A DNA stretch of 57,424 nucleotides, counting the filler, from Platydemus manokwari (lineage: Eukaryota): assembly GCA_037951405.1 (NCBI GenBank). It is 6 parts of 6 records of this genome, joined end to end, with 100 filler letters (N's around TTAATTAATTAA, not from the genome) between each part and the next. Parts side by side here need not be neighbours in the genome. Positions count along the whole stretch, not along the records: positions 37,954 to 47,657 come from JBBMOY011214767.1; 5 more parts are not named here. One strand, written 5' to 3'. Shown in pieces: positions 6,501 to 47,657 of this stretch (the first letter of the stretch is position 1; each line of letters opens with the position of its first letter). Both the position numbers and the translations under genes were made by a program. Below the pieces are notes generated by a model that saw only the letters and a program-made list of their open reading frames with translations, was not told where the DNA came from and ran no database searches.

Positions 6501-8204
6501 TCCAAAGATTAGAAATAACGATGAAACAAATTGTGAGGATTTTAAAATTTTTGTAAGCTAATAAGAATTTAAAATTAATTTTTCTCAGCTTAAATAATAA
6601 ATAAATAAAGGAATTTAAATAATTTGTTTGAATATTCTGGATTAATGTATTTTGTGGGTTGACTTTCTTGGGTTTGTTTTTGATTAAATAGTCTTTTTTC
6701 GCATGGGTTATGAGAAAATTAATTATAGAAAAGTATAGGAAAACCAAAAAAATATGAAAATATAAAGAAGATAGAGTATATATGGAACACGGGGAATATA
6801 TTTTGTTGGGTGCAAGACCCCAACCCAGATAGTAATAATAATCAACACAAATTTTGTTTAAGGAAAATTTAAAAATAGAATCAGATCATAATAACTCATA
6901 AAAATAAATTAAATAAAATAAAAAAGTAGAAATATAATTAAATAAAGAAAAGATAAAAAAGTATAAATAAGAAGCCTATTATTAGAATGGACAAGTTATT
7001 ATAATACGCTTATTACTACGACATTTTCAGAAAAGAACGTCATTACCGTCTAACTAACCAGTTTTGTTGCTTATTCTTTCATCTGTCGATGAGAACTTTG
7101 AATAATTCGCTCACTGCTCGATTTGAATCGGCAGCCATTCATAGAACTCTTTTATCACTTAGCTACGGTCCATGGTAGATGTTATTATTGGAATGAGCTT
7201 TCACATCGATACTCCATCACATTTTGAAGAGATCATATTAAATGAACTATCAAATAAGAAATCACTATGACAACATGGCGGTAAGTTGTAAGTAGAAAGA
7301 ATTCACAAGGAATATCAATTGCTATAAAATATTTCTATGAGAAATAATATTGCAGCCAGTTAAAAAAATAGTTAATTAAATAAAAATTCCATCGCCAAAT
7401 AGCACAACATGAAAAATTGTCGAAGTTCAATAAATTCTTTCAATACAAAAATCATTCTCACAATTATAAAAATGAACTTTTTTTCAAATATTTGGCATTT
7501 ATTTACAAATCTTATAATTCCATTTTATACCACTAATTCCAGATATGAGAAAGAATTGATAAATGGAATTATTTAAATTTATTTTTCTGGAAACGAGTAA
7601 TTTATGGATTTATTTAGTGGAAAAATTTTAATTTCATAAAACCCGTGTTGGTGTCGAACGAATGATTCTATTTTATGAGTTTTGCTTTCTGTATATCTAT
7701 ACAATCGATCAATAATGCTTGTCCTTGTTATTTCCAACGGAATATTTTTTTATGGAATAAAAAATATATCCACAAAAATAATAGGGGAAAAAAAACGACT
7801 TTTCGTTTTAAAAAACAAATCCTCTTTTGACGTGATTCAAATTCAACAAATCTAATTTTATTTTTTTCAATTTTACATAATTTATGATGGCGTTGGGACT
7901 CGATAAGAAAGTGGTTATTAACATATCATCACCAAAGTGACATCGTCAAGTAATATTTTCAACTGTCATTTGATAAAAACATCTCCAATGTGATGCATAA
8001 TTAATTTATTTCCCCTCAACTAATCAAAACTCAATAATTGGGAGCTATTTGCATACTCTAATGTTACACTTATGTAAATTTATAGAATCCATTTCTAGCC
8101 AGACAATTATTCCCAAAGAGGAAGTTATTTTAATAAAATTGATTTAGGGATTAATAATTGCGTTCCTTAATCAAATTGTTCGTGTGGATTTTGTTTGTTA
8201 CTGA

Positions 8205-37953: not shown

Positions 37954-38027
37954 TGGGCGGCATGTCGTCTTCTGTTGCTCGGATGCGATCTGCGAAGGCA
38001 AAAAAGCATACAAATTGTGATTAGGCG

Positions 38028-38094
38028 CCGTCCGTCCGTCCGATTGAAGCCATTGCCCTCGTTCAACCTGCTTGATCCAGCATTGGTTATATTT
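38028..38094 (-). repeat. Left-arm terminal module (38-nt hairpin block plus CAATC(GGAC)n)
   Basis: The reverse complement of 38057-38094 is identical to 47530-47567. The reverse complement of 38028-38046 is identical to 47590-47608. Confidence 0.95.
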
Positions 38095-40225
38095 GAGGGC
38101 ATGGATGATGCTTATTTCCTGTTCTTGTGTCTTTGGTGTCGCTTGCTCTATCCTTCCGTCGGCAGCAAAGGAGATTTTGGCTGTCTTCTTTTATGGGGTT
38201 GATTTCTAGTGGTGTTTCGGTGTGTTTTTCCTTGTCCTCTGGGGCGTTTGTGATCCAGTCCTGTCCAGGACTTTTTTTTCCAGGTTGCGCCGATTTTCCC
38301 GGCTGTTTGGTTTCTTTCCCGGCGAAGACGCGCTCAGCTTTTTCGAGGATCGCAGCGTAGGACGCTTTTTCTTCATTTTGCTCCGCTATGAGGCGTCTTG
38401 CTTCTGTGAGTTCCGCTAGGGCCCTCTGGAAATCCGCGGCTACCTTCGGATTTATTTCTGTTTCCTCCTCCGTGCTCGTGTTCTCTGCTGAGGCCTCTTC
38501 TTCTGATGTGGTGTCTTCTGTTTGGGTTTTGTGGATAATGTCTTTCTGCTTCTCGATGATCTGTCTTTCCTCTTTGATTGATGTTAGCAGCGTCTCGGTC
38601 GTCTCCTTGATCTTGTTCATTCTGGCGACCTCCTTTTTGATATTTTGTAGGATTGACTCATGCTCTCCTTTATCTTGGTCTTGTTTCCTCATGAGGGCTT
38701 CTTTTGCTTCCAGCAGTAGTCTTATTTCCTCCTTCAGTGCTTGTCTTTCTCCACGTATTCCTTTGAGGATTGCCTCGTTTTCCGTCTTAACTTGTGTCAG
38801 CTTGGCGACTTCTTGCTGGACCTGGATTTGCGCTGCTAATATTTCCTGCAGCATTTTTTCGGTGTCTTCGCTGTTGTCTTGTCTTGAGGCGTTCTCCTTG
38901 TCTGTTACTTTCTCTGTCATCCTTTCTAGCTGCTCCTTGAGGTCCTTGACTTCCTTTTGTAGTGCAGTTTTTTCCGTCTGGGTGATGCCCCAGGCTGCCT
39001 CTGTCCTGCTCCGAGCTTCTTTGAATGGTATATTTTCCATGGTGGATAGCTTGAGCGTTTCTTTGCACTGTTGCAGGTAGGGGCAGCCCAGGTATCGGGC
39101 TCCGTGGGCTCCCAGGCAGTTGGCGCACTTCCGGTTGGTGTTGGCCTTCCGGTAGTCCTCATCTTTCTTGGCCAGTGGGCAGTCGTTGTAGCTGTGGGCC
39201 TCGGCGCAGTACCTGCAGACTTCCGGTCCACGACAGCTGGGTCTTGTGTGTCCTGCTTTAAGGCATCTGGAGCACTGTATTACTCTCGGGATGAGTCGCT
39301 CCGGCTGTTGTTGTCTTCTGTAGAAGTTGATCTTGTCTGGGATTTCACATCCCTCTGTTGAGATGATGGCCACCGTCGTCGGGGTGTTATTTCTGGTGGT
39401 GATTCTCTCTGCAGTCTTGAAGACGAGGTGCGGGTTGTCTTTTTGGAGTTGTTTCTTGATATCGTCGTTGCTGAGTTGCGTGGGGATCCTCTTGATCACC
39501 CACCTCCTCTCCTCTACGAAGCTTGTGATCTCGATCTCCGTGTCGTCGTCCAGCTGCAGTATTTTGCCGCTTTTGGCGACTTGGGCCAGCAGGATTCTGG
39601 TCGTCTGCATCTTGTTAATGAAAGCGACGATTCCATCCCGAGTCTTTCGAAGGCTGGCGATGGTTCTCTTGCCTGTCGTTGTTTCGATGAGCGAGATGAT
39701 TTTATCTCTTGTCATTGCCGCTAGCAGGTTGGTGTCTTTGTTGATTTGCCGGATGGCAACTTTGGTGACTTCCTTCTGCCCTGCTTCAGCTGTGGCTTCT
39801 GGTTGAGGTCTGGCTTGAGACTTGTCAGCTGCTGTCCCTCTGCCGGCCGCTGACTTCTCTGGTGATTTGCTCTTTCGCCCTGATAAGGGCGCTGTGGTTA
39901 TATTTTTTGCCCTGAGAAGGGCAGTGGGTGGTTCTGTTTTTGCCCTGAGAAGGGCATTGGGCGATTCTGCATCAGAACCTTGTGGCGGTGTCCCAGGAGA
40001 CTCACTGCTCTCTGGGGCGGGAGTTTCCGCTGGTCGCCCTGATAAGGGCGTCGTGGTTATATTTTCTGCCCTGATAAGGGCAGTGGGCGGTTCGATGTCC
40101 GAACCATTAGAAGGTTGGTTTGGCGGCCCGCTTGAAGCTGGGCTGCAAGCGGTCGCTGGCTTGCTTGTGGCTTGAGTCCCCCTCGTCGCCGCCGGCCGTT
40201 TTCCTTTTCCTCTTGACTTGGACAT
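38087..40225 (-). CDS. Gag-like ORF1 paralog (three CCHC knuckles, long coiled coil); frame open to 40396, likely start MSKSRGKGKR at 40225 (712 aa)
   Basis: VIQCSRCLKAGHTRPSC...CRYCAEAHSYNDC...CANCLGAHGARYLGC is preceded by an RRM-like VIKRIP...AERI region. No pol frame follows. The ATG at 40396 lies upstream of the minus-strand TATA box (40348-40354), so the 40225 start is preferred. Confidence 0.88.
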   Translation of the reverse strand: MSKSRGKGKRPAATRGTQATSKPATACSPASSGPPNQPSNGSDIEPPTALIRAENITTTPLSGRPAETPAPESSESPGTPPQGSDAESPNALLRAKTEPPTALLRAKNITTAPLSGRKSKSPEKSAAGRGTAADKSQARPQPEATAEAGQKEVTKVAIRQINKDTNLLAAMTRDKIISLIETTTGKRTIASLRKTRDGIVAFINKMQTTRILLAQVAKSGKILQLDDDTEIEITSFVEERRWVIKRIPTQLSNDDIKKQLQKDNPHLVFKTAERITTRNNTPTTVAIISTEGCEIPDKINFYRRQQQPERLIPRVIQCSRCLKAGHTRPSCRGPEVCRYCAEAHSYNDCPLAKKDEDYRKANTNRKCANCLGAHGARYLGCPYLQQCKETLKLSTMENIPFKEARSRTEAAWGITQTEKTALQKEVKDLKEQLERMTEKVTDKENASRQDNSEDTEKMLQEILAAQIQVQQEVAKLTQVKTENEAILKGIRGERQALKEEIRLLLEAKEALMRKQDQDKGEHESILQNIKKEVARMNKIKETTETLLTSIKEERQIIEKQKDIIHKTQTEDTTSEEEASAENTSTEEETEINPKVAADFQRALAELTEARRLIAEQNEEKASYAAILEKAERVFAGKETKQPGKSAQPGKKSPGQDWITNAPEDKEKHTETPLEINPIKEDSQNLLCCRRKDRASDTKDTRTGNKHHPCPQI
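39876..40082 (-). repeat. Five 16-nt hairpins YGCCCT-TMTC-AGGGCR
   Basis: Copies at 39876-39891, 39908-39923, 39941-39956, 40035-40050 and 40067-40082. The outer pair covaries between C-G and T-A. Confidence 0.92.
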
Positions 40226-40347
40226 ATTTTCCGGTATTGTGCAATCGTGGCTGGCTGCCAATGGTGTAGCACGTCTGTCTCCGCTGAGCGCTGAGAAGCA
40301 CTGTGTGTGTGATTGAGGATGTCTCAGAATCGCCGCCGATATCGGAG

Positions 40348-40469
40348 TTTTATACCTCGGCGACGAGGAAGACGAAACGGGCGGTTGCGACTGCATGCGT
40401 GTTTCTAGCGATTTGATTGGTTGTGCCGAATTCGTCCTTTTCCTCGTCCTTTCCGAGCTCGTATATAAA
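40348..40469. promoter_or_regulatory. Putative mirror-symmetric bidirectional Pol II promoter
   Basis: TATAAAA on minus (40348-40354), TATATAAA on plus (40462-40469), ATTGG (CCAAT box) at 40416-40420. Inverted sub-motifs: CTCGG/CCGAG, GACGAGGAA/TTCCTCGTC, GACGAA/TTCGTC. Confidence 0.7.
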
Positions 40470-40931
40470 GCCGGTAAAGGTGCCGTTTTTTTACAACTAC
40501 ATCAGACATCGTGCTTTGCATCCCATGTGCTTGGCAGCGTTTACCCATTCAAGGGGCCCTGAAATATTCAGACGGATTGTGTTTGCTTCTTGCTGGATCT
40601 TACTTTGATGTGTACTTTGTGGCGGATTTTGTGACTTCAGTGATGTTTCAGTGAATTTCGAGTGCGGCGAGCGAAGCGGAGCGGTTCGTAAGTAGGCAAT
40701 AATTCAATATATACTTTAAACCTAGGTAAAATAACTAGCCATAGCCTTAGCCTTAGCACTAACTAAATAGACAATCTGTAACTGCTAACATAAATAACAT
40801 CGCTAACTATTAAATAATTAAACAAGATAAATATATAAAACAGGAATAACTAGTCAAGAAGCTAATTAGGTAATCATAGCTTAAAAGCAAAACTTATTAA
40901 CTACTCAAAGACAAGATTAGCAACGGTAACC

Positions 40932-42563
40932 ATGCCCCCCACTACTAGAGGCAAATCTGTGGAGAAAGTTGCACCAGCAAAAAGTCAGGAAAGGACAAAC
41001 GGTGTGGCTAAACAACCCAGACCGCGGACGGTGAAGCCCATCCCCGAACTTCCGGAGGAAGTCCGGCAGGAAAAAGTAAAAGAACAGAGGGACAAAAGAA
41101 CGGAAGGACTACTGATCCGCGTGACACAATTGGAAGGAGGGGAGTGCCGCCTAACATCAATAGGTAAAAAGGCGGCAATCAATGTACTGGAAGGCGGACT
41201 CGGGACTCGAGCGATAAGAATCATCTCATTCAACCCAGATAAATCGATGACAATAACACCTAACAGAGGCTCGCCAGTAGATAAAATTATAGACAAAATA
41301 GTAAAACAGGACGGACCAGAAACCATGGACCTCCAAACACATGGAATCAGGATTAAACTTGAACTCGTTCCTCCAACATCAAAGTTCGTGATAAAAGGAA
41401 TAAACCCGACGACGAAAATAGACAAGATCCAAGAGGAATTAACAGCTGAAAACCCGAAGGTGAAGTTCGTCAATGTTGAAAGGCTGTATGGAAGCAACGG
41501 CATAACCACGTCGATAATAGTCGCAGTATGTGAGAGCGCAGATACTCCACACAGTATAAGATACATGGGGAGGGAGAAATACACTGAAAATTTCATTCCC
41601 CCCGTAATCCAATGCGCCAAATGCAACAAATTTGGACACACGAAAAACGTATGTCGGGCAACCCACCCGACTTGCAAATTTTGCAGCGGACAACACTGGC
41701 ACGGGGACTGCCGCTATGCGAAGGAAGATAAAGACTATAAGCTGAAAAACAAAAATAGGAGGTGCTCCAATTGCCAAGGGAACCACGGAGCCAGATTTGG
41801 CGGATGCCCGGCCCTCAAGCTGACAAAACTGGCCTGGAGAGAAGCCAACCTAACCAACACATCAATGCGGATCACCAAGTGGAGACAAGAAAACACGAAA
41901 AATCTACCGGAAACACAATCAGAAGTAAGAATCATTCAGGCCGAGATGGCAAACATAAAGAATAAGCTAAGTAGCGAACATCCAACAGACGCAAAAAGGG
42001 ACCAAAACAAAAACGGGAGAGAAAACCCTGCAACCCCTAACTCGGAACAAACGAAAGAAATAGTAACACAATGGAAAGCAACAGCAACGGAAATAGCAAA
42101 AGTGAAAAAAGACACAAAGTCAACAGAAGAAAGACTTACTAAGCTAAATAAGAACATAGAAGAAGCAGCCAACAGAATGGAGCAGGCTAAAAAGGAGATG
42201 ATGGATATGAAAGCAGATATCACAATAATGATTGAAGAAGGGAAAAAAGAACTCAAGCAGCTAGCCGACAATATAAAAAACGATTTGGCAGCCAAAGACC
42301 AAGCCACACAGGAGGCACTAGGAGGAAACTCGAATTGGCAAAACGAAGTTGCTCAAACCTTGAGAGGAATCAAGGAAAGACTCAACCAACAGGCGGCAGA
42401 GCTCAGAGAGACAAAAAGAGAAACAGCAGGTATGATACAAGAAGCAGTGGCGTTCGCCACGGGCAGGAGAGCCAACCCAGCATGGAAAGTGGCGGAGGAG
42501 GAAGAAGAAACAACTGAGGAGAGCAGCACAGCAACAGAGGATACAGAGGGAGAAGAAAACTAA
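40932..42563 (+). CDS. LINE ORF1, gag-like nucleic-acid-binding protein (three CCHC knuckles plus coiled coil)
   Basis: VIQCAKCNKFGHTKNVC...CKFCSGQHWHGDC...CSNCQGNHGARFGGC. It lies 41 nt upstream of ORF2. Confidence 0.93.
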   Translation: MPPTTRGKSVEKVAPAKSQERTNGVAKQPRPRTVKPIPELPEEVRQEKVKEQRDKRTEGLLIRVTQLEGGECRLTSIGKKAAINVLEGGLGTRAIRIISFNPDKSMTITPNRGSPVDKIIDKIVKQDGPETMDLQTHGIRIKLELVPPTSKFVIKGINPTTKIDKIQEELTAENPKVKFVNVERLYGSNGITTSIIVAVCESADTPHSIRYMGREKYTENFIPPVIQCAKCNKFGHTKNVCRATHPTCKFCSGQHWHGDCRYAKEDKDYKLKNKNRRCSNCQGNHGARFGGCPALKLTKLAWREANLTNTSMRITKWRQENTKNLPETQSEVRIIQAEMANIKNKLSSEHPTDAKRDQNKNGRENPATPNSEQTKEIVTQWKATATEIAKVKKDTKSTEERLTKLNKNIEEAANRMEQAKKEMMDMKADITIMIEEGKKELKQLADNIKNDLAAKDQATQEALGGNSNWQNEVAQTLRGIKERLNQQAAELRETKRETAGMIQEAVAFATGRRANPAWKVAEEEEETTEESSTATEDTEGEEN

Positions 42564-42604
42564 AGACCACAAGAAAGCAAGTTAAATCGCCGAGGAAACC
42601 AACA

Positions 42605-45600
42605 ATGGCAAGAGAAAACATAACTTTAGCGCAGTGGAACTGCCGAGGTATTGAGGGAAACCTCCCCAGCATGAGACAACTACTGGGAAATGACGTGGAC
42701 GTCCTAGTACTCCAAGAAACCCATCTAAAGCAATCACAAAAATATAGAAGCCGAGGATTCACCGCTATCAGAAGGGACAGACCGAACAGAGAAGGAGGGG
42801 GGGTAATGATACTAGTCAGGGAAAAACTCCAGATCATCAATCAAGAAAGCTTTGGAACAACCAACATGGAGGGTGTCAGTGCGGAAATAGCTGGGAACCC
42901 AAGGAACGTAACAATAATTAACATTTACTGCCCGGTAGGTAGAATAGAAGAGGAAGACATAAGGGAACTACAGGACAGATTGAAGACTACTACCATAATA
43001 ATGGGGGATTTTAACTGCCACCACCCAGTGTGGGGCTCTAGAAGAAGCAGCGCAGGAGGCAGAAGACTATTGGAATTTATTGAAACCAACCAGCTAACAA
43101 TCCTTAATGATGGGTCCATCACAAGAGTAGATCCTCGGCCGACCAAAAGTGACTCATCAGTAGATATTACGATAGTGACAGAGGACCTAGCAGGAAGTCT
43201 ATGGGAAATAGGTGAGGACACTACCAGCGACCACCTCCCAATCATAGTCAGGACCACCACCAAACCCAGGAAAAACAAAGACAGCACTAGGCCCACATTC
43301 ACGTACAAAAACGCCAACTGGACCAGCTTCATAGAAGAGCTAGAAAGAATAGACCTTAGGAGGAGAGATCAGGAAGAACTAGAGTCATATGTGGACAGAT
43401 TCACAGTAAGTATTTTAAAAGCTGCTACCAAGCACATACCAAATAGAAACATGCCTGAAAACATCAGAAGGGCAGCACGACCAACCACACATGGAGGACA
43501 CAGAAACAACCCAACAAACCGTGAAACAGAGGAGGGTAGTCCGCCCACACAAAAAGACAACAACACACCAAGAAACAAGAATCCAGTAATATGGTGGAAT
43601 AATAATTGTACACTGGCGGTACGAAACAGGAAAAAAGCGCTACAGAAATACAGAAGACAGCGCACAGAAGAAAACTATGAAGAATACAAAGAATACAGAA
43701 ATTCAGCCAACAAAACAATCAAAAAAGCCAAGGAGACCGAATGGAGAACCTATTGCCAGAAGATCAACCCTGACACACCAGTAAGCGATGTCTGGAAGCA
43801 GATTAAAACAATAAAAGGCAGCAACAGGACGAGTAACATCCCCACAATAAAACAACCTACAATGGCAATCACGGATAAGGAAAAAGCGAGTGCATTTGCA
43901 GAACACTTCCATAAAGTTTTCTCCAATGAAAGGACCGGAGTGCAAGAACTAGAGAGAAGGAAGAAATTCTTAGAGGAAGCAGAGGAGGAACCACAGGCGG
44001 ATATTGAGGACTACTATATGGATACGGACCTAACTGTGGATGAAGTGACAGCAGCAATAAGGGAAAAATCAGATACGGCAGCAGGAGCTGATATCCTCAG
44101 CTACACGATTTTAAAAAAGGTACCAGCAAAAATAATAGGAACATTGACAGAGCTGTATAACACCATCTGGAGGACAGGAAACATCCCAAAACAATGGAAA
44201 ACGGCAATAATAGTGCCCATACGAAAAGAAAACAAAGAAGGCCACAAAGTAGACTCATATAGACCCATAGCGCTAACATCTCACATAGGAAAAATCATGG
44301 AAACGGTAGTAAATAAAAGAATAAAATTCCACATGGAGAAAAACGACATATACAGCACGACCCAATCAGGCTTCAGAAGTCAGCGAAACACCATGGACCA
44401 AGTCATAAAACTAGAGAACGACGTCAAGAAAGGTTTCAAGAAAGGAGAAAAGACTATAGCAGTCTTCCTGGACCTAGAACAGGCCTATGACCAGTGCTGG
44501 CGGGAAGCAGCACTCCTTAAACTAAATAGAATAGGAATAGTGGGAAGAACATTCAAATACGTAGCAAGCTTCCTCCAGGATAGGACTTTCAAAGTCAGAA
44601 TTAGAAATGAGGAGTCACAGACCTTATGCCAGGAAAACGGAATACCCCAGGGCTCAGTCATCTCCCCAACAATCTTTACAATATTAGTAAACGACCTAAA
44701 TGAAGTGATAGAAGATGAGAAAACGGGCCTCTCACAATTTGCGGATGACTGTGCCGTATGGAGAAGCGGGAAAGATGTAAAGTTCACCAGGATCAAACTG
44801 CAAGGACAACTCCAACACATCGCGCGCTGGATGGAAAAATGGGGTTTCAAAATTAACACGGAAAAGACAGTCAGCATGGTTTTCAGCAGGAAGAGAAAGA
44901 AAGAGTATATGGACATCAAGATAAAGATCCAAGAGAAGAAAATAAAAAGAGTAGCCAGCACCCGCTTCCTAGGAATGATCCTGGACGACAAACTGACCTG
45001 GAAGCCACATATCGATAAAGTAGTAGAAAAGGGCAAGAGAGCCCTCAATATTCTCCGAGTCATCAAAGGGAGCGGATGGGGAGCCCATACGTCAACAATG
45101 ATAACACTGTACAAGGCACTGATTCGAGGAAAAATTGAGTACGGAAGCATAGTATACGATGCAGCCCAAGAAGGCACGAAGAAGAAATTAGACACCATCC
45201 AAAATATGGCAATGAGAACAATCCTAGGAGCAGGTAAGTGTACGTCGAAGGAAGCCATGGAAGTCGCCCTAGGTCTAACACCGCTCAACATAAGAAGGAA
45301 ACAGCTAACGTATAACTACTGGACCCGGGTAGCACAGGATGAGAACCACCCGGCATTTTCGACATTCACAGAAAATAGGAGCAAATGGGGAGGAATACCG
45401 ATCTTTAAATTACAGAGACCAGCAGGATGGGATGCGGCGGAAGAAATGAAAAAATCAAAAGAACTGGCTAATACAATCCTGGAAATTAAAACACGAAGAC
45501 AAACAGTTCCACCCTGGGAGTGCAAACTACCAATAACAGATAGCAGCCTGGCCACGAGAATATCTAAGAACACAGGAGACCTGGAGGCCAAGTGCATCAC

Positions 45601-46465
45601 CGAGGAATATATAGAAGAAATTAGACGAGACAACCTAATAATATACACAGATGGATCCAAAAATAACCAGGGGCAAGTAGGAGCAGGGATAGTCGTCCCA
45701 CACTGGAACATCTGCAAATCCTTTAAGCTGACAGACCATGCCTCAGTATTCACAGCCGAACTCATAGGGATCCTCAAGGCAATCGAAACAGCGACGGAGA
45801 ACCCACCAAACAAACTAAGCATACTGACAGACTCACTGGCGGCAGTTCACGCACTAGGAAACTTTACAAGAGGAACAAGACCGGACATAAAGGAGGAAAT
45901 CATAACCAAAACCACACACCTTAGAAACTTGGGATGCCAAATCAGCATAGGTTGGATACCGGCGCACAGGGACATCGCGGGAAATGAGAAGGCAGACAGA
46001 GCAGCCAAAGCAGGTATATACAGTAAAGACCAAATCCAAACCGGCCTGGGAAAAACTGAAGGGAAAAGCATCATCAAAACCTACGTGCAAAAGAAGTGGC
46101 GGGAACAATGGAAGGACAGCCCGAGGGGACGACTGGCGCACCAACACCTGAATGAGCCAACATTTAGACCCCAAGTCAAGGAACTAATGAAAATTCCCAC
46201 TAACCAGAAGATGTGGAGACTGCGACTGGGATACTGGAAGGATCGATACGTCAGCCCACTATGCATGCAGTGCCTGGAGACCAACACAATAGATCACTTC
46301 ATGATAACCTGCAGCAACTTCACAGAAGAGCGGAAAGACCTGACAGATTATTTCACAAACATGAACAAGGTAATGACGACCAAAGAATGCCTACATATAA
46401 ACAGCGACAAAGAAATACAAAGATTAGTCAAACAGTACATCAACCGAACAGGAAAGGACATATAG
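42605..46465 (+). CDS. LINE ORF2: APE endonuclease, reverse transcriptase, RNase H, CCHC (I group, e.g. I/Nimb/Loa-like)
   Basis: APE: QWNCRG, LQET, GDFNCH, SDHLPI. RT: YRPIALTS, QSGFR, FLDLEQAYD, GIPQGSVISP, FADD. RNase H: IYTDGS, TAEL, TDS, WIPAH..GNEKAD. C-terminal CMQC..H....C. Uninterrupted 1286 aa. Confidence 0.97.
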   Translation: MARENITLAQWNCRGIEGNLPSMRQLLGNDVDVLVLQETHLKQSQKYRSRGFTAIRRDRPNREGGGVMILVREKLQIINQESFGTTNMEGVSAEIAGNPRNVTIINIYCPVGRIEEEDIRELQDRLKTTTIIMGDFNCHHPVWGSRRSSAGGRRLLEFIETNQLTILNDGSITRVDPRPTKSDSSVDITIVTEDLAGSLWEIGEDTTSDHLPIIVRTTTKPRKNKDSTRPTFTYKNANWTSFIEELERIDLRRRDQEELESYVDRFTVSILKAATKHIPNRNMPENIRRAARPTTHGGHRNNPTNRETEEGSPPTQKDNNTPRNKNPVIWWNNNCTLAVRNRKKALQKYRRQRTEENYEEYKEYRNSANKTIKKAKETEWRTYCQKINPDTPVSDVWKQIKTIKGSNRTSNIPTIKQPTMAITDKEKASAFAEHFHKVFSNERTGVQELERRKKFLEEAEEEPQADIEDYYMDTDLTVDEVTAAIREKSDTAAGADILSYTILKKVPAKIIGTLTELYNTIWRTGNIPKQWKTAIIVPIRKENKEGHKVDSYRPIALTSHIGKIMETVVNKRIKFHMEKNDIYSTTQSGFRSQRNTMDQVIKLENDVKKGFKKGEKTIAVFLDLEQAYDQCWREAALLKLNRIGIVGRTFKYVASFLQDRTFKVRIRNEESQTLCQENGIPQGSVISPTIFTILVNDLNEVIEDEKTGLSQFADDCAVWRSGKDVKFTRIKLQGQLQHIARWMEKWGFKINTEKTVSMVFSRKRKKEYMDIKIKIQEKKIKRVASTRFLGMILDDKLTWKPHIDKVVEKGKRALNILRVIKGSGWGAHTSTMITLYKALIRGKIEYGSIVYDAAQEGTKKKLDTIQNMAMRTILGAGKCTSKEAMEVALGLTPLNIRRKQLTYNYWTRVAQDENHPAFSTFTENRSKWGGIPIFKLQRPAGWDAAEEMKKSKELANTILEIKTRRQTVPPWECKLPITDSSLATRISKNTGDLEAKCITEEYIEEIRRDNLIIYTDGSKNNQGQVGAGIVVPHWNICKSFKLTDHASVFTAELIGILKAIETATENPPNKLSILTDSLAAVHALGNFTRGTRPDIKEEIITKTTHLRNLGCQISIGWIPAHRDIAGNEKADRAAKAGIYSKDQIQTGLGKTEGKSIIKTYVQKKWREQWKDSPRGRLAHQHLNEPTFRPQVKELMKIPTNQKMWRLRLGYWKDRYVSPLCMQCLETNTIDHFMITCSNFTEERKDLTDYFTNMNKVMTTKECLHINSDKEIQRLVKQYINRTGKDI

Positions 46466-47529
46466 AAGTAGGGCACAAGTAAAACAGAAAGGATTAGGTC
46501 AAGTAACGAACCACAGCAAGACAACCTGGCCAGCAAAGAAGTAGAGGACGGTAAGTAACCCCCAAGACGGTGGAACCTAGAAACAGAGAGAGGATCTCCC
46601 AGGTGGAACGAGACCCAGACAGAGAAGAAAAGATGACGAGGTCCCCAAACCGAGGAGAGCTAGAGATGGAGCCAACAGCAACTCAAGTACAAGAGAACCA
46701 ACAGAGGGTGCAAACATGGCTACCAAAAACCAAAGAGGGATAAAACAAATAACCTAAACAACGAATAGCCAAATAGACTAAAGGATTAAAAATAACACTC
46801 AAAATAACTAAGCAAGTAGAAAATCTAAGGAAACGAACAAATAAGTAAACAAACAGTAAACAGTAACAATAAGATAAAAGCCCAGCAAAAGATAGACAAA
46901 TATAAGTAACAAAAATCAAAACCAGGAAAGACCTAGCACTAAAGTAGAACTCAGACTATAAAAGCTAAAATACTAAAAAGTCTATGACAAATAACCTAAA
47001 GCAATGAAAATTACAATCGCGAAATAAGTAAATTTCAAAGAATACAACCTAAAGAACAATATAAAGTACAAAGGCTTACCAAAACGGCCACAGTAAAACA
47101 TAGCAAATTATACTAGAACCTAAAAATAGGCGAAAGGCGGTCTAGCAGGGCACCCGAACAATCTCCCCAGCGACGATCAATGGGGAGCAAACCTCAAGGC
47201 GGCCCTGCGGGATAAAAAAACATAAAAAGCAAACAAAAATTTAAAAAAATAAACCAACTAACGAACTAAAAAAGAGTAACAATAGGCGAAAACAACGAGC
47301 AAAACCGCATAAAGACCGCAAACAAGGAACCGAAGAGAACTCTCGACCTGTCCACAGTGCTGCGAAAGGCCTGGAAGCTACCTCTGGCAAACTGGCAGCT
47401 GCAACCCGGGAGGCACGACGTCTGCTGCAAGGAAGCGATCGACCGAAGCGTGAAGAAACAACAAACGTAGCAACACAGTCAACTCATCAACAAAAGAATG
47501 AAGAAGATAACGCCCTAAAAATACGCCTT

Positions 47530-47612
47530 AAATATAACCAATGCTGGATCAAGCAGGTTGAACGAGGCGGAATTTTTCTTTTTTTTTCCCAATCGGACGG
47601 ACGGACGGACGG
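47530..47612 (+). repeat. Right-arm terminal module (38-nt hairpin block plus CAATC(GGAC)n)
   Basis: AAATATAACCAATGCTGGATCAAGCAGGTTGAACGAGG, then a T-rich spacer, then CAATCGGACGGACGGACGGACGG. Confidence 0.95.
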
Positions 47613-47657
47613 GCCGTTTTTTTAGCTCCCAAGCGGATCACACACACAGTGCTTCTC

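What the first reader, a model, noticed from the sequence alone, without database searches (positions are those of the whole stretch)
38028..47612. Identical 38-nt hairpin plus CAATC(GGAC)n module terminates both arms as an inverted repeat
Seen: 38/38 identity (38057-38094 vs 47530-47567) and 19/19 identity (38028-38046 vs 47590-47608) around a variable spacer (10 vs 22 nt), although the ORF1 genes are highly diverged. The 38-mer can fold as AACC-AA-TGCT-[GGATCA]-AGCA-GGTT and overlaps the gag-A stop codon. Known: stringent LINEs recognise a 3' stem-loop plus microsatellite tail (for example the GGAUA loop of UnaL2) that is shared with their non-autonomous partners. Inference: this is an RT-recognition signal, or alternatively an intercistronic RNA-processing signal or a 3' promoter (it contains CCAAT).
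Basis: partly seen in the sequence, partly recalled or inferred. Interest (0 to 1): 0.85.

Follow-up and report, generated by a model that had tools for sequence, protein, structure and literature searches.

The report
Shared 3' RNA handle of two retrotransposons
Two separate non-LTR retrotransposons, one complete and one carrying only a gag gene, lie head to head and end in the same folded RNA hairpin plus (GGAC)n tail, which is most likely the handle that the complete element's reverse transcriptase grips to copy both.

Summary
The spacers between them are unrelated, 10 nt and 22 nt.

They are not the two arms of one unit.
- **Element B (40494-47612, +)** is a complete LINE with gag and an APE-RT-RNaseH pol. 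It is flanked by a perfect 12-bp target-site duplication.
- **Element A (minus strand)** has only a gag ORF, which runs straight into the module. Its gag is 29% identical to B's, and nothing else in A matches B.
- **A second A copy** begins 12 nt beyond B's right-hand duplication, where the piece ends.

The module folds as a three-tier hairpin. The apical 9 bp and the loops are invariant. The 9-bp basal helix lies mostly outside the identical block; it has five two-sided compensatory changes and one G-C to G-U change, and every cell still pairs. Related LINEs from other samples show the same plan with (GTAA)n or (AACC)n tails.

The best reading is a stringent-type reverse-transcriptase recognition and priming signal, shared by an autonomous LINE and a gag-only partner. 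This is indirect: no other copies could be found, so A's mobility and the protein-RNA contact are untested. One feature is unexplained: diverged, symmetric TATA-bearing arms lie upstream of both A copies.

The parts
38028..38046 (-). Element A 3' terminus: CAATC(GGAC)3GG
   Evidence: 19/19 identical to 47590-47608 (I5). Tandem repeat of 3.8 copies.
38050..38104 (-). Element A three-tier hairpin: 9-bp basal helix, 5-bp middle helix, 4-bp apical helix with GGAUCA loop. It contains the gag-A stop codon (38087-38089).
   Evidence: Folding. Pair counts. Shuffled-flank test: 9 of 2000 fold as well.
38087..40225 (-). gag-A ORF, 712 aa from the ATG at 40225 (the open frame reaches 40396). It has an RRM-like region, three CCHC knuckles and a coiled coil. 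No pol follows.
   Evidence: The profile search finds LINE ORF1 relatives. Sense strand is 37% A and 12% T, like B.
40226..40313 (-). Element A 5' UTR. Its first 21 nt (40313 down to 40293) recur exactly at 47637-47657.
   Evidence: I4.
40314..40376 (-). Left promoter-like arm upstream of A, carrying a TATAAAA box
   Evidence: Homologous to the right arm: 39 of 58 aligned columns match, 0 of 1000 shuffles score as high.
40431..40493 (+). Right promoter-like arm, carrying a TATATAAA box. It is interrupted at its end by the B insertion.
40482..40493 (+). Left copy of B's 12-bp target-site duplication, GCCGTTTTTTTA
   Evidence: The only two occurrences in the window, one at each end of B.
40494..47612 (+). 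Element B, a complete LINE of 7119 bp: 5' UTR, gag-B 40932-42563, pol 42605-46465 (APE, RT, RNase H), and an A-rich 3' UTR
47520..47574 (+). Element B three-tier hairpin
   Evidence: Shuffled-flank test: 62 of 2000 fold as well.
47575..47589 (+). Remainder of the T-rich B spacer. The A spacer is shorter and unrelated.
47590..47612 (+). Element B 3' terminus: CAATC(GGAC)4GG
47613..47624 (+). Right copy of B's 12-bp target-site duplication
47637..47657 (+). Start of a second, plus-oriented A copy (A'), cut off by the end of the piece
   Evidence: 21/21 identical to the A 5' UTR (I4).

Best explanation
The piece holds two independent non-LTR retrotransposons. B is an intact autonomous LINE. A is a gag-only 'half-LINE' whose gag is only distantly related to B's. 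The roughly 85-nt ends of both RNAs carry the same bipartite cis signal.

1. The first part is a three-tier hairpin. Its apical two helices, internal loops and GGAUCA loop are sequence-invariant. Its basal helix only has to pair.
2. The second part, after a free spacer, is CAAUC followed by a short (GGAC)n repeat.

Inferred mechanism: B's ORF2 protein binds the apical hairpin. It positions the (GGAC)n repeat at the nicked target and starts target-primed reverse transcription there, with slippage that varies the repeat number. A offers the same handle and is therefore copied in trans, while supplying its own gag.

Shown here: the anatomy, the conservation pattern, the covariation, B's target-site duplication, and the parallel design in relatives. 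Inferred only: protein binding, priming within the repeat, and trans-mobilisation of A.
For: - **Sharp limits of similarity.** It is confined to a 42-nt and a 19-nt block. The spacer, the rest of the 3' region and the proteins are diverged. A recent transfer of one contiguous piece would not leave a diverged spacer between two identical blocks.
- **Covarying basal helix.** Five of its nine pairs changed on both sides and one changed G-C to G-U, yet all 36 cells pair. Sliding the partners drops pairing to 22-56% with 0-1 compensations.
- **Flank tests.** The native flanks stabilise the fold far more than shuffled flanks (9/2000 for A, 62/2000 for B). Swapping flanks between the copies loses the helix.
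- **B's insertion signature.** B ends exactly at (GGAC)4GG and is bracketed by a perfect 12-bp duplication. The re-joined target aligns collinearly with the other arm.
- **Tail length varies.** 3.8 against 4.8 repeat units.
- **Relatives are built alike.** L003 and L005 have pols 67% identical. Their last 64 nt differ at 4 positions and include a two-tier hairpin with a 4-bp apical stem and a hexaloop, followed by (GTAA)n. The rest of their 3' UTR is poorly conserved. Two independent insertions, L001 and L008, are about 99% identical up to an (AACC)n tail of different length and then unrelated.
- **A looks like a partner element.** It has an intact 712-aa gag ORF, LINE-like base composition and no pol. 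A second copy starts at 47637.
- **Precedent.** In UnaL2, a bipartite stem with a GGAUA loop plus (UGUAA)n is required for retrotransposition and is shared with SINE partners (PMC1636434; PMC3747384).
Against: - Only two copies of the module exist in the data, so covariation rests on one pairwise comparison.
- No other copy was found in any searchable collection.
- A's own target-site duplication is not statistically supported, so A's mobility is unproven.
- Both A copies have homologous TATA-bearing sequence upstream. A transcript started downstream of the TATA box would not carry that sequence along.
- No binding, transcript-end or transposition data exist.
Confidence: 0.68

Rival explanations
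1. Recent chimera without lasting selection. A picked up B's 3' end, or B picked up A's, by template switching during reverse transcription. The blocks are identical simply because the event is young.
For: 60 of 61 block positions are identical although the proteins are 29% identical. Tail swapping of this kind is how SINE/LINE pairs arise (PMC3747384).
Against: The spacer between the two identical blocks is unrelated in sequence and length. The basal helix flanking the 42-mer has diverged at most positions while keeping every pair. One young contiguous transfer would make these identical too. Even if a transfer did occur, retention of the module still points to a cis function.
Confidence: 0.1
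2. A is not mobile. It is a host, domesticated gag gene family with its own TATA promoter, present as a head-to-head pair. Its 3' module is a fossil of the retroposition that created it.
For: Homologous TATA-bearing arms lie upstream of both A copies, symmetric about 40403/40404. The ORF is intact. No significant target-site duplication was found for A.
Against: A fossil would not stay 60/61 identical to the active B element while its spacer and basal helix drifted. The arms are about 67% identical, but the first 21 nt of the two A copies are 21/21 identical. That suggests young A copies in older, diverged surroundings. A's base composition is LINE-like.
Confidence: 0.1
3. The module is an RNA 3'-end formation or processing signal, or a promoter for whatever lies downstream, as the HeT-A 3' end is for its neighbour. 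It would not be an RT handle.
For: The block contains CCAAT. B's end lies 24 nt upstream of the start of the next A copy. No AATAAA signal precedes either tail.
Against: There is no TATA or initiator-like element between the module and A'. A's module is followed by unrelated DNA. A hairpin whose basal helix covaries acts as RNA, not as duplex promoter DNA. No Rfam family matches. The terminal microsatellite of variable length, with the duplication starting directly after it, is the signature of priming and not of cleavage.
Confidence: 0.07
4. One composite element with a central bidirectional promoter and terminal inverted repeats.
For: The arrangement is head to head, with the same module at both outer ends.
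Against: A perfect 12-bp duplication brackets B alone: 40482-40493 lies inside the supposed unit and 47613-47624 outside it. Removing B restores a right arm collinear with the left arm. A third element start follows at 47637.
Confidence: 0.03

Closest known systems
UnaL2 / UnaSINE1 (eel, L2 clade): the stringent-type 3' tail
   Same: Both have a conserved 3' stem-loop divided by internal loops. Both have a purine-rich apical loop beginning GGAU (GGAUA there, GGAUCA here). Both end in a short terminal repeat, typically about three units there and 3.8 to 4.8 here. Both share the module with a non-autonomous partner (PMC1636434; PMC3747384).
   Different: The pol here has an RNase H domain and is preceded by a three-knuckle gag. 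From my own knowledge, L2-clade elements lack these. The repeat is a tetranucleotide preceded by CAAUC, and a 10-22 nt free spacer separates hairpin and tail. The partner is a 2.3-kb gag-coding element and not a tRNA-derived SINE. No sequence similarity was tested or claimed.
HAL1 (half-L1), the ORF1-only derivatives of mammalian L1
   Same: A non-autonomous LINE relative that keeps ORF1 and lacks ORF2 (PMC5753468).
   Different: HAL1 is an L1 derivative that relies on relaxed poly(A) recognition. Here the partner's gag is only 29% identical to the autonomous element's gag, and the two share only a specific 61-nt bipartite signal.
HeT-A with TART/TAHRE (Drosophila telomeric retrotransposons)
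   Same: A gag-only element presumed to borrow reverse transcriptase from a separate autonomous LINE. The sense strand is A-rich (own knowledge; one search lists the literature).
   Different: There are no head-to-tail terminal arrays here, the tail is not poly(A), and B is an ordinary insertion flanked by a duplication. An explicit shared RNA hairpin is visible here.
I-factor-like LINEs (APE-RT-RNaseH, three-knuckle ORF1, (TAA)n tail)
   Same: The domain order and gag type match. The terminus is a microsatellite and not poly(A) (PMC3747384, for the I element's TAA repeats).
   Different: The best database pol is only 30% identical. The clade was not placed by phylogeny, and the tail is a tetranucleotide.

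Membership tests
Stringent-type LINE 3' recognition module | Conserved 3' stem-loop shared by an autonomous LINE and a non-autonomous partner, with similarity confined to the tail | tested here: met
Stringent-type LINE 3' recognition module | Secondary structure supported by compensatory substitutions | tested here: met
   Five two-sided changes and one one-sided change in the basal helix, with 100% of cells paired. Flank shuffles and flank swaps agree. Only two sequences are available.
Stringent-type LINE 3' recognition module | Short tandem repeat at the extreme 3' end, variable in copy number, directly abutting the target-site duplication | tested here: met
   The same holds in the relatives L001/L008 and L003.
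Stringent-type LINE 3' recognition module | The module is required for retrotransposition and is bound by the element's RT | not testable with these tools
   Needs a retrotransposition or binding assay.
L2 clade (the clade of UnaL2) | Phylogenetic placement of the RT in the L2 clade, and a single-ORF or RNase H-less architecture | tested here: not met
   RNase H domain (PF00075, E 1.5e-16) and a three-knuckle gag are present. No phylogeny was run.
ORF1-only half-LINE (HAL1 or HeT-A type) | Encodes gag/ORF1 and no reverse transcriptase | tested here: met
   The gag ORF runs into the 3' module, and 74 nt of unrelated flank follow.
ORF1-only half-LINE (HAL1 or HeT-A type) | Multi-copy and mobile, with target-site duplications | tested here: inconclusive
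   A second copy start lies at 47637-47657. The candidate A duplication shares only a 7-mer, which happens in 229 of 2000 shuffles.
HAL1 specifically | Deletion derivative of the co-resident autonomous element, with near-identical ORF1 | tested here: not met
   29% amino-acid identity.
Telomeric LINE arrays (HeT-A/TART) | Head-to-tail arrays without target-site duplications | tested here: not met
   Head-to-head arrangement, and a 12-bp duplication around B.
Terminal-inverted-repeat composite element | A duplication at the outer ends of the whole unit, and none inside | tested here: not met
   The duplication brackets B only.
APE-type non-LTR retrotransposon with RNase H (I-like group) | APE, RT and RNase H domains in order, preceded by an ORF1 with CCHC knuckles | tested here: met
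APE-type non-LTR retrotransposon with RNase H (I-like group) | RT phylogeny placing it within a named clade | not tested
   No clade-labelled reference sequences were available. The best hits are unnamed.

The most novel reading that the evidence does not exclude
A, A' and B may all have been aimed at one short promoter region. The two A copies begin at the homologous ATCACA position, about 40 nt downstream of the TATA box, in each of two diverged, mirror-symmetric arms. B sits 12 nt upstream of the A' start. On the left, 66 nt beyond A's tail, an ATG CCG CCC... start is cut off by the edge. This would be a LINE and gag-only partner system that inserts in sense orientation into the 5' leaders of a divergent host gene pair. 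The promoter-less partner would then be driven by the host TATA promoters, and the shared hairpin-plus-tail would be the only thing the two elements have in common.
Probability: 0.15. Interest if true: 0.7.

Novelty: new variant of a known kind. Interest (0 to 1): 0.45.

Why it matters
Most evidence for how LINE reverse transcriptases choose their template comes from a few L2- and R1/R2-type elements and their SINE partners. Here a distantly related RNase H-bearing LINE lineage, at best 30% identical to any catalogued pol, shows the same logic in clean form. One part of the RNA is invariant, one part only has to pair, the spacer is free, and a tetranucleotide repeat sits at the priming end. 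The partner is a protein-coding gag-only element with its own, very different gag. Because the conserved and free positions are already marked by natural variation, this gives a ready-made mutational design for testing RT-template recognition. If A proves mobile, it is also a non-telomeric parallel to the HeT-A/TART division of labour.

Tried and rejected
- **More copies of the module.** The exact 24-mer hairpin core was not found in metagenome, viral or prokaryote-genome collections. A relaxed loop-plus-tail pattern was not found in metagenomes either.
- **Source contig.** Exact look-ups of B's pol and gag are not on record, so the organism stays unknown.
- **gag-A relatives.** The word-based search gave one weak hit, Ixodes, E 1e-6. 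The exhaustive profile search found many LINE ORF1 relatives, but none above about 43% identity to gag-A or 56% over 90 aa to gag-B. P0052 is followed by a pol and is therefore autonomous. P0053 lies on a 1.3-kb fragment. No hit carries a name.
- **Rfam.** No family matches at E up to 1.
- **A's 3' flank as a third copy of the A 5' region, implying a head-to-tail array.** Rejected: alignment scores fall within the shuffle range.
- **A's target-site duplication.** Best match 8/12, with a shared 7-mer (AATCACA) that turns up in 11% of shuffles. Left as inconclusive.
- **L001's (AACC)n as a LINE tail.** This was first put in doubt by a 4841-bp tandem duplication that covers it. The independent copy L008 then confirmed it.
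- **PDB sequence searches.** They confirm only generic LINE features: L1 ORF2p for the RT, TRAS1 for the endonuclease, nucleocapsid knuckles for gag.
Full report
**1. What is in the piece**

The 9.7-kb piece (37954-47657) contains three large reading frames.
- On the plus strand, a 543-aa gag (40932-42563) is followed after 41 nt by a 1286-aa pol (42605-46465).
- The pol has endonuclease/exonuclease/phosphatase, reverse transcriptase and RNase H domains in that order.
- Its best solved relatives are L1 ORF2p for the RT and the TRAS1 endonuclease.
- On the minus strand there is a single ORF of 712 aa from the ATG at 40225, ending at 38087. Its frame stays open upstream to 40396.
- This ORF has three CCHC knuckles and a long coiled coil.
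- It is homologous to the plus-strand gag, but at only 29% identity over 303 residues.

I call the minus-strand unit A and the plus-strand unit B.

**2. The observation**

It is correct as written.
- The inverted repeat search returns 38057-38098 against 47526-47567 (42 nt, one mismatch) and 38028-38046 against 47590-47608 (19/19).
- The spacers are 10 and 22 nt and are unrelated.
- The tail is a tetranucleotide repeat of 3.8 copies on A and 4.8 on B.
- GGACGGACGG occurs nowhere else in the window.
- Global and local alignment of the two 3' regions shows that similarity is confined to these two blocks. Upstream, the best local score equals the shuffle mean.

**3. Two elements, not two arms**

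- GCCGTTTTTTTA occurs exactly twice in the window. One copy is at 40482-40493, and the other is at 47613-47624, directly after B's (GGAC)4GG.
- A 12-mer matching somewhere in the roughly 500-nt candidate 5' region is expected about 3e-5 times by my own arithmetic. This is therefore B's target-site duplication.
- B is thus a discrete, complete 7119-bp LINE insertion (40494-47612).
- Twelve nucleotides beyond the right-hand duplication, the last 21 nt of the piece are an exact copy, in plus orientation, of the start of A's 5' UTR (I4).
- With B removed, the sequence upstream of this second A start (A') aligns collinearly, across the excision point, with the sequence upstream of A on the other strand.
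- Before B arrived, the locus was therefore two A units head to head. The inverted placement of the two modules is a by-product of B landing, in A' orientation, just upstream of A'.

**4. The module is a conserved RNA structure**

- Both copies fold into the same hairpin.
- Extending 10 nt beyond the identical block on each side, where the sequences differ, deepens the fold by 12.0 kcal/mol in A and 8.3 kcal/mol in B.
- Only 9 of 2000 (A) and 62 of 2000 (B) shuffled flanks do as well. Exchanging the flanks between the copies destroys the extension.
- I counted a common structure of 18 pairs on the gapless two-sequence alignment.
  - The nine apical and middle pairs never vary.
  - Of the nine basal pairs, five changed on both sides and one changed from C-G to U-G.
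  - All 36 cells form standard pairs.
  - Sliding the 3' partners by 1-3 columns gives 22-56% pairing with 0-1 compensations.
- The pattern is therefore as follows.
  - Invariant: the GGAUCA loop, the two upper helices and their internal loops.
  - Must only pair: the basal helix.
  - Free: the spacer.
  - Invariant again: CAAUC plus a repeat of variable length.
- A young contiguous transfer would not leave a diverged spacer and a compensated helix between and around identical blocks. The identity therefore reflects selection on two separate sites.

**5. Relatives are built the same way**

- B's pol has no close relative among 5.8 billion clusters. The best hit is 30% identical.
- Two of the relatives, L003 and L005, come from different samples and have pols 67% identical.
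  - Their last 64 nt differ at only 4 positions.
  - That stretch contains a two-tier hairpin with a 4-bp apical stem and a hexaloop, and one stem change from A-U to G-U.
  - It is followed about 20 nt later by (GTAA)n.
  - The remainder of their 1-kb 3' UTR is poorly conserved.
- Two independent insertions of another relative, L001 and L008, are about 99% identical up to an (AACC)n run of different length, and unrelated beyond it.
- This pol lineage as a whole therefore ends in lineage-specific tetranucleotide repeats. In the one further lineage where two diverged elements could be compared, a conserved terminal hairpin precedes the repeat.

**6. Mechanism**

This anatomy matches the experimentally defined stringent type.
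- In eel UnaL2, a stem divided by an internal loop, a GGAUA loop recognised by the element's protein, and a terminal (UGUAA)n repeat are all required.
- Reverse transcription starts in that repeat, with slippage.
- The same tail lets SINE partners be mobilised (PMC1636434; PMC3747384).

I therefore infer three things.
- B's ORF2 protein binds the apical hairpin.
- It primes within (GGAC)n at the nicked target.
- A is copied in trans because it presents the same handle.

Features of A that fit this role:
- It has essentially no 3' UTR, since its ORF runs into the hairpin. With 12% T in the sense strand, the last 130 stop-free codons have a chance probability of about 0.007 by my own arithmetic.
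- It has LINE-like base composition, 37% A and 12% T.
- A second copy of it is present.

A thus resembles the ORF1-only half-LINEs (HAL1, PMC5753468) and, functionally, HeT-A. Unlike HAL1, it is not a deletion derivative of its partner.

**7. What remains unexplained**

- The roughly 60 nt upstream of both A starts are homologous. They match at 39 of 58 aligned columns, with three 3-nt indels, and 0 of 1000 shuffles score as high.
- These arms begin 27 nt from a common centre at 40403/40404, and each carries a TATA box about 40 nt before the A start.
- The arms are about 67% identical, yet the first 21 nt of A and A' are 21/21 identical.
- Either young A copies have inserted at the homologous site of two old, paralogous promoter arms, or a promoter-plus-A unit was duplicated in inverted orientation and later homogenised in the transcribed part.
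This could be a degraded 12-bp duplication, but a shared 7-mer arises in 11% of shuffles.
- 66 nt beyond A's tail, on the same strand, ATG CCG CCC A is cut off by the edge of the piece.
- The piece alone cannot decide between these readings.

**8. Verdict**

- The RT-handle interpretation is the best supported, though the evidence is indirect.
- The idea of two arms closed by a terminal inverted repeat is rejected.
- The processing-signal and 3'-promoter alternatives have no support.

Noticed in passing
window 39877-40081 (minus strand): Five copies of a 14-nt perfect palindrome, GCCCTTMTCAGGGC (0.01 expected by chance), lie inside the 33-nt repeats of the gag-A N-terminal region. The palindrome is read in two frames, giving ALIRA/ALLRA and PLSGR. 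On the other strand it contains TGATAAG, a GATA-factor-like site. It could form five small RNA hairpins near the 5' end of the A transcript.
   Followed up: partly
window 40314-40493, centre 40403/40404: There is a mirror-symmetric promoter-like region. Diverged homologous arms (TTCGTC..TTCCTCGTC..CCGAG..TATA box) face outwards towards A and A'. CCAAT/ATTGG motifs sit in the non-palindromic 54-nt centre.
   Followed up: partly
window 37954-37963 (minus strand): 66 nt beyond A's tail, and in the same orientation, the piece ends with ATG CCG CCC A. This may be the start of a host gene cut off by the edge, but it is too short to test.
   Followed up: no
window 47637-47657: The piece ends 21 nt into a second copy of A's 5' UTR. 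The assembly probably broke at this repeat.
   Followed up: yes
window 40736-40757: A (TAGCCT)3.7 microsatellite lies within B's 438-nt 5' UTR.
   Followed up: no
L001 8732-15762: A tandem duplication of period 4841 bp with only a few mismatches. It joins the last 1.4 kb of the related LINE, including its (AACC)n tail and downstream flank, to part of an LTR-retrotransposon pol (integrase).
   Followed up: partly
L001 3170-4242: The 5' region of the related LINE consists of about seven tandem monomers of 164-166 nt, reminiscent of the promoter monomers of mouse L1.
   Followed up: no
L003 9720-9782, L005 5320-5382, L001 10160-10190, L008 about 7160-7185: Relatives of B's pol end in different tetranucleotide repeats, (GTAA)n and (AACC)n. 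The tail unit seems to co-vary with the RT lineage.
   Followed up: yes
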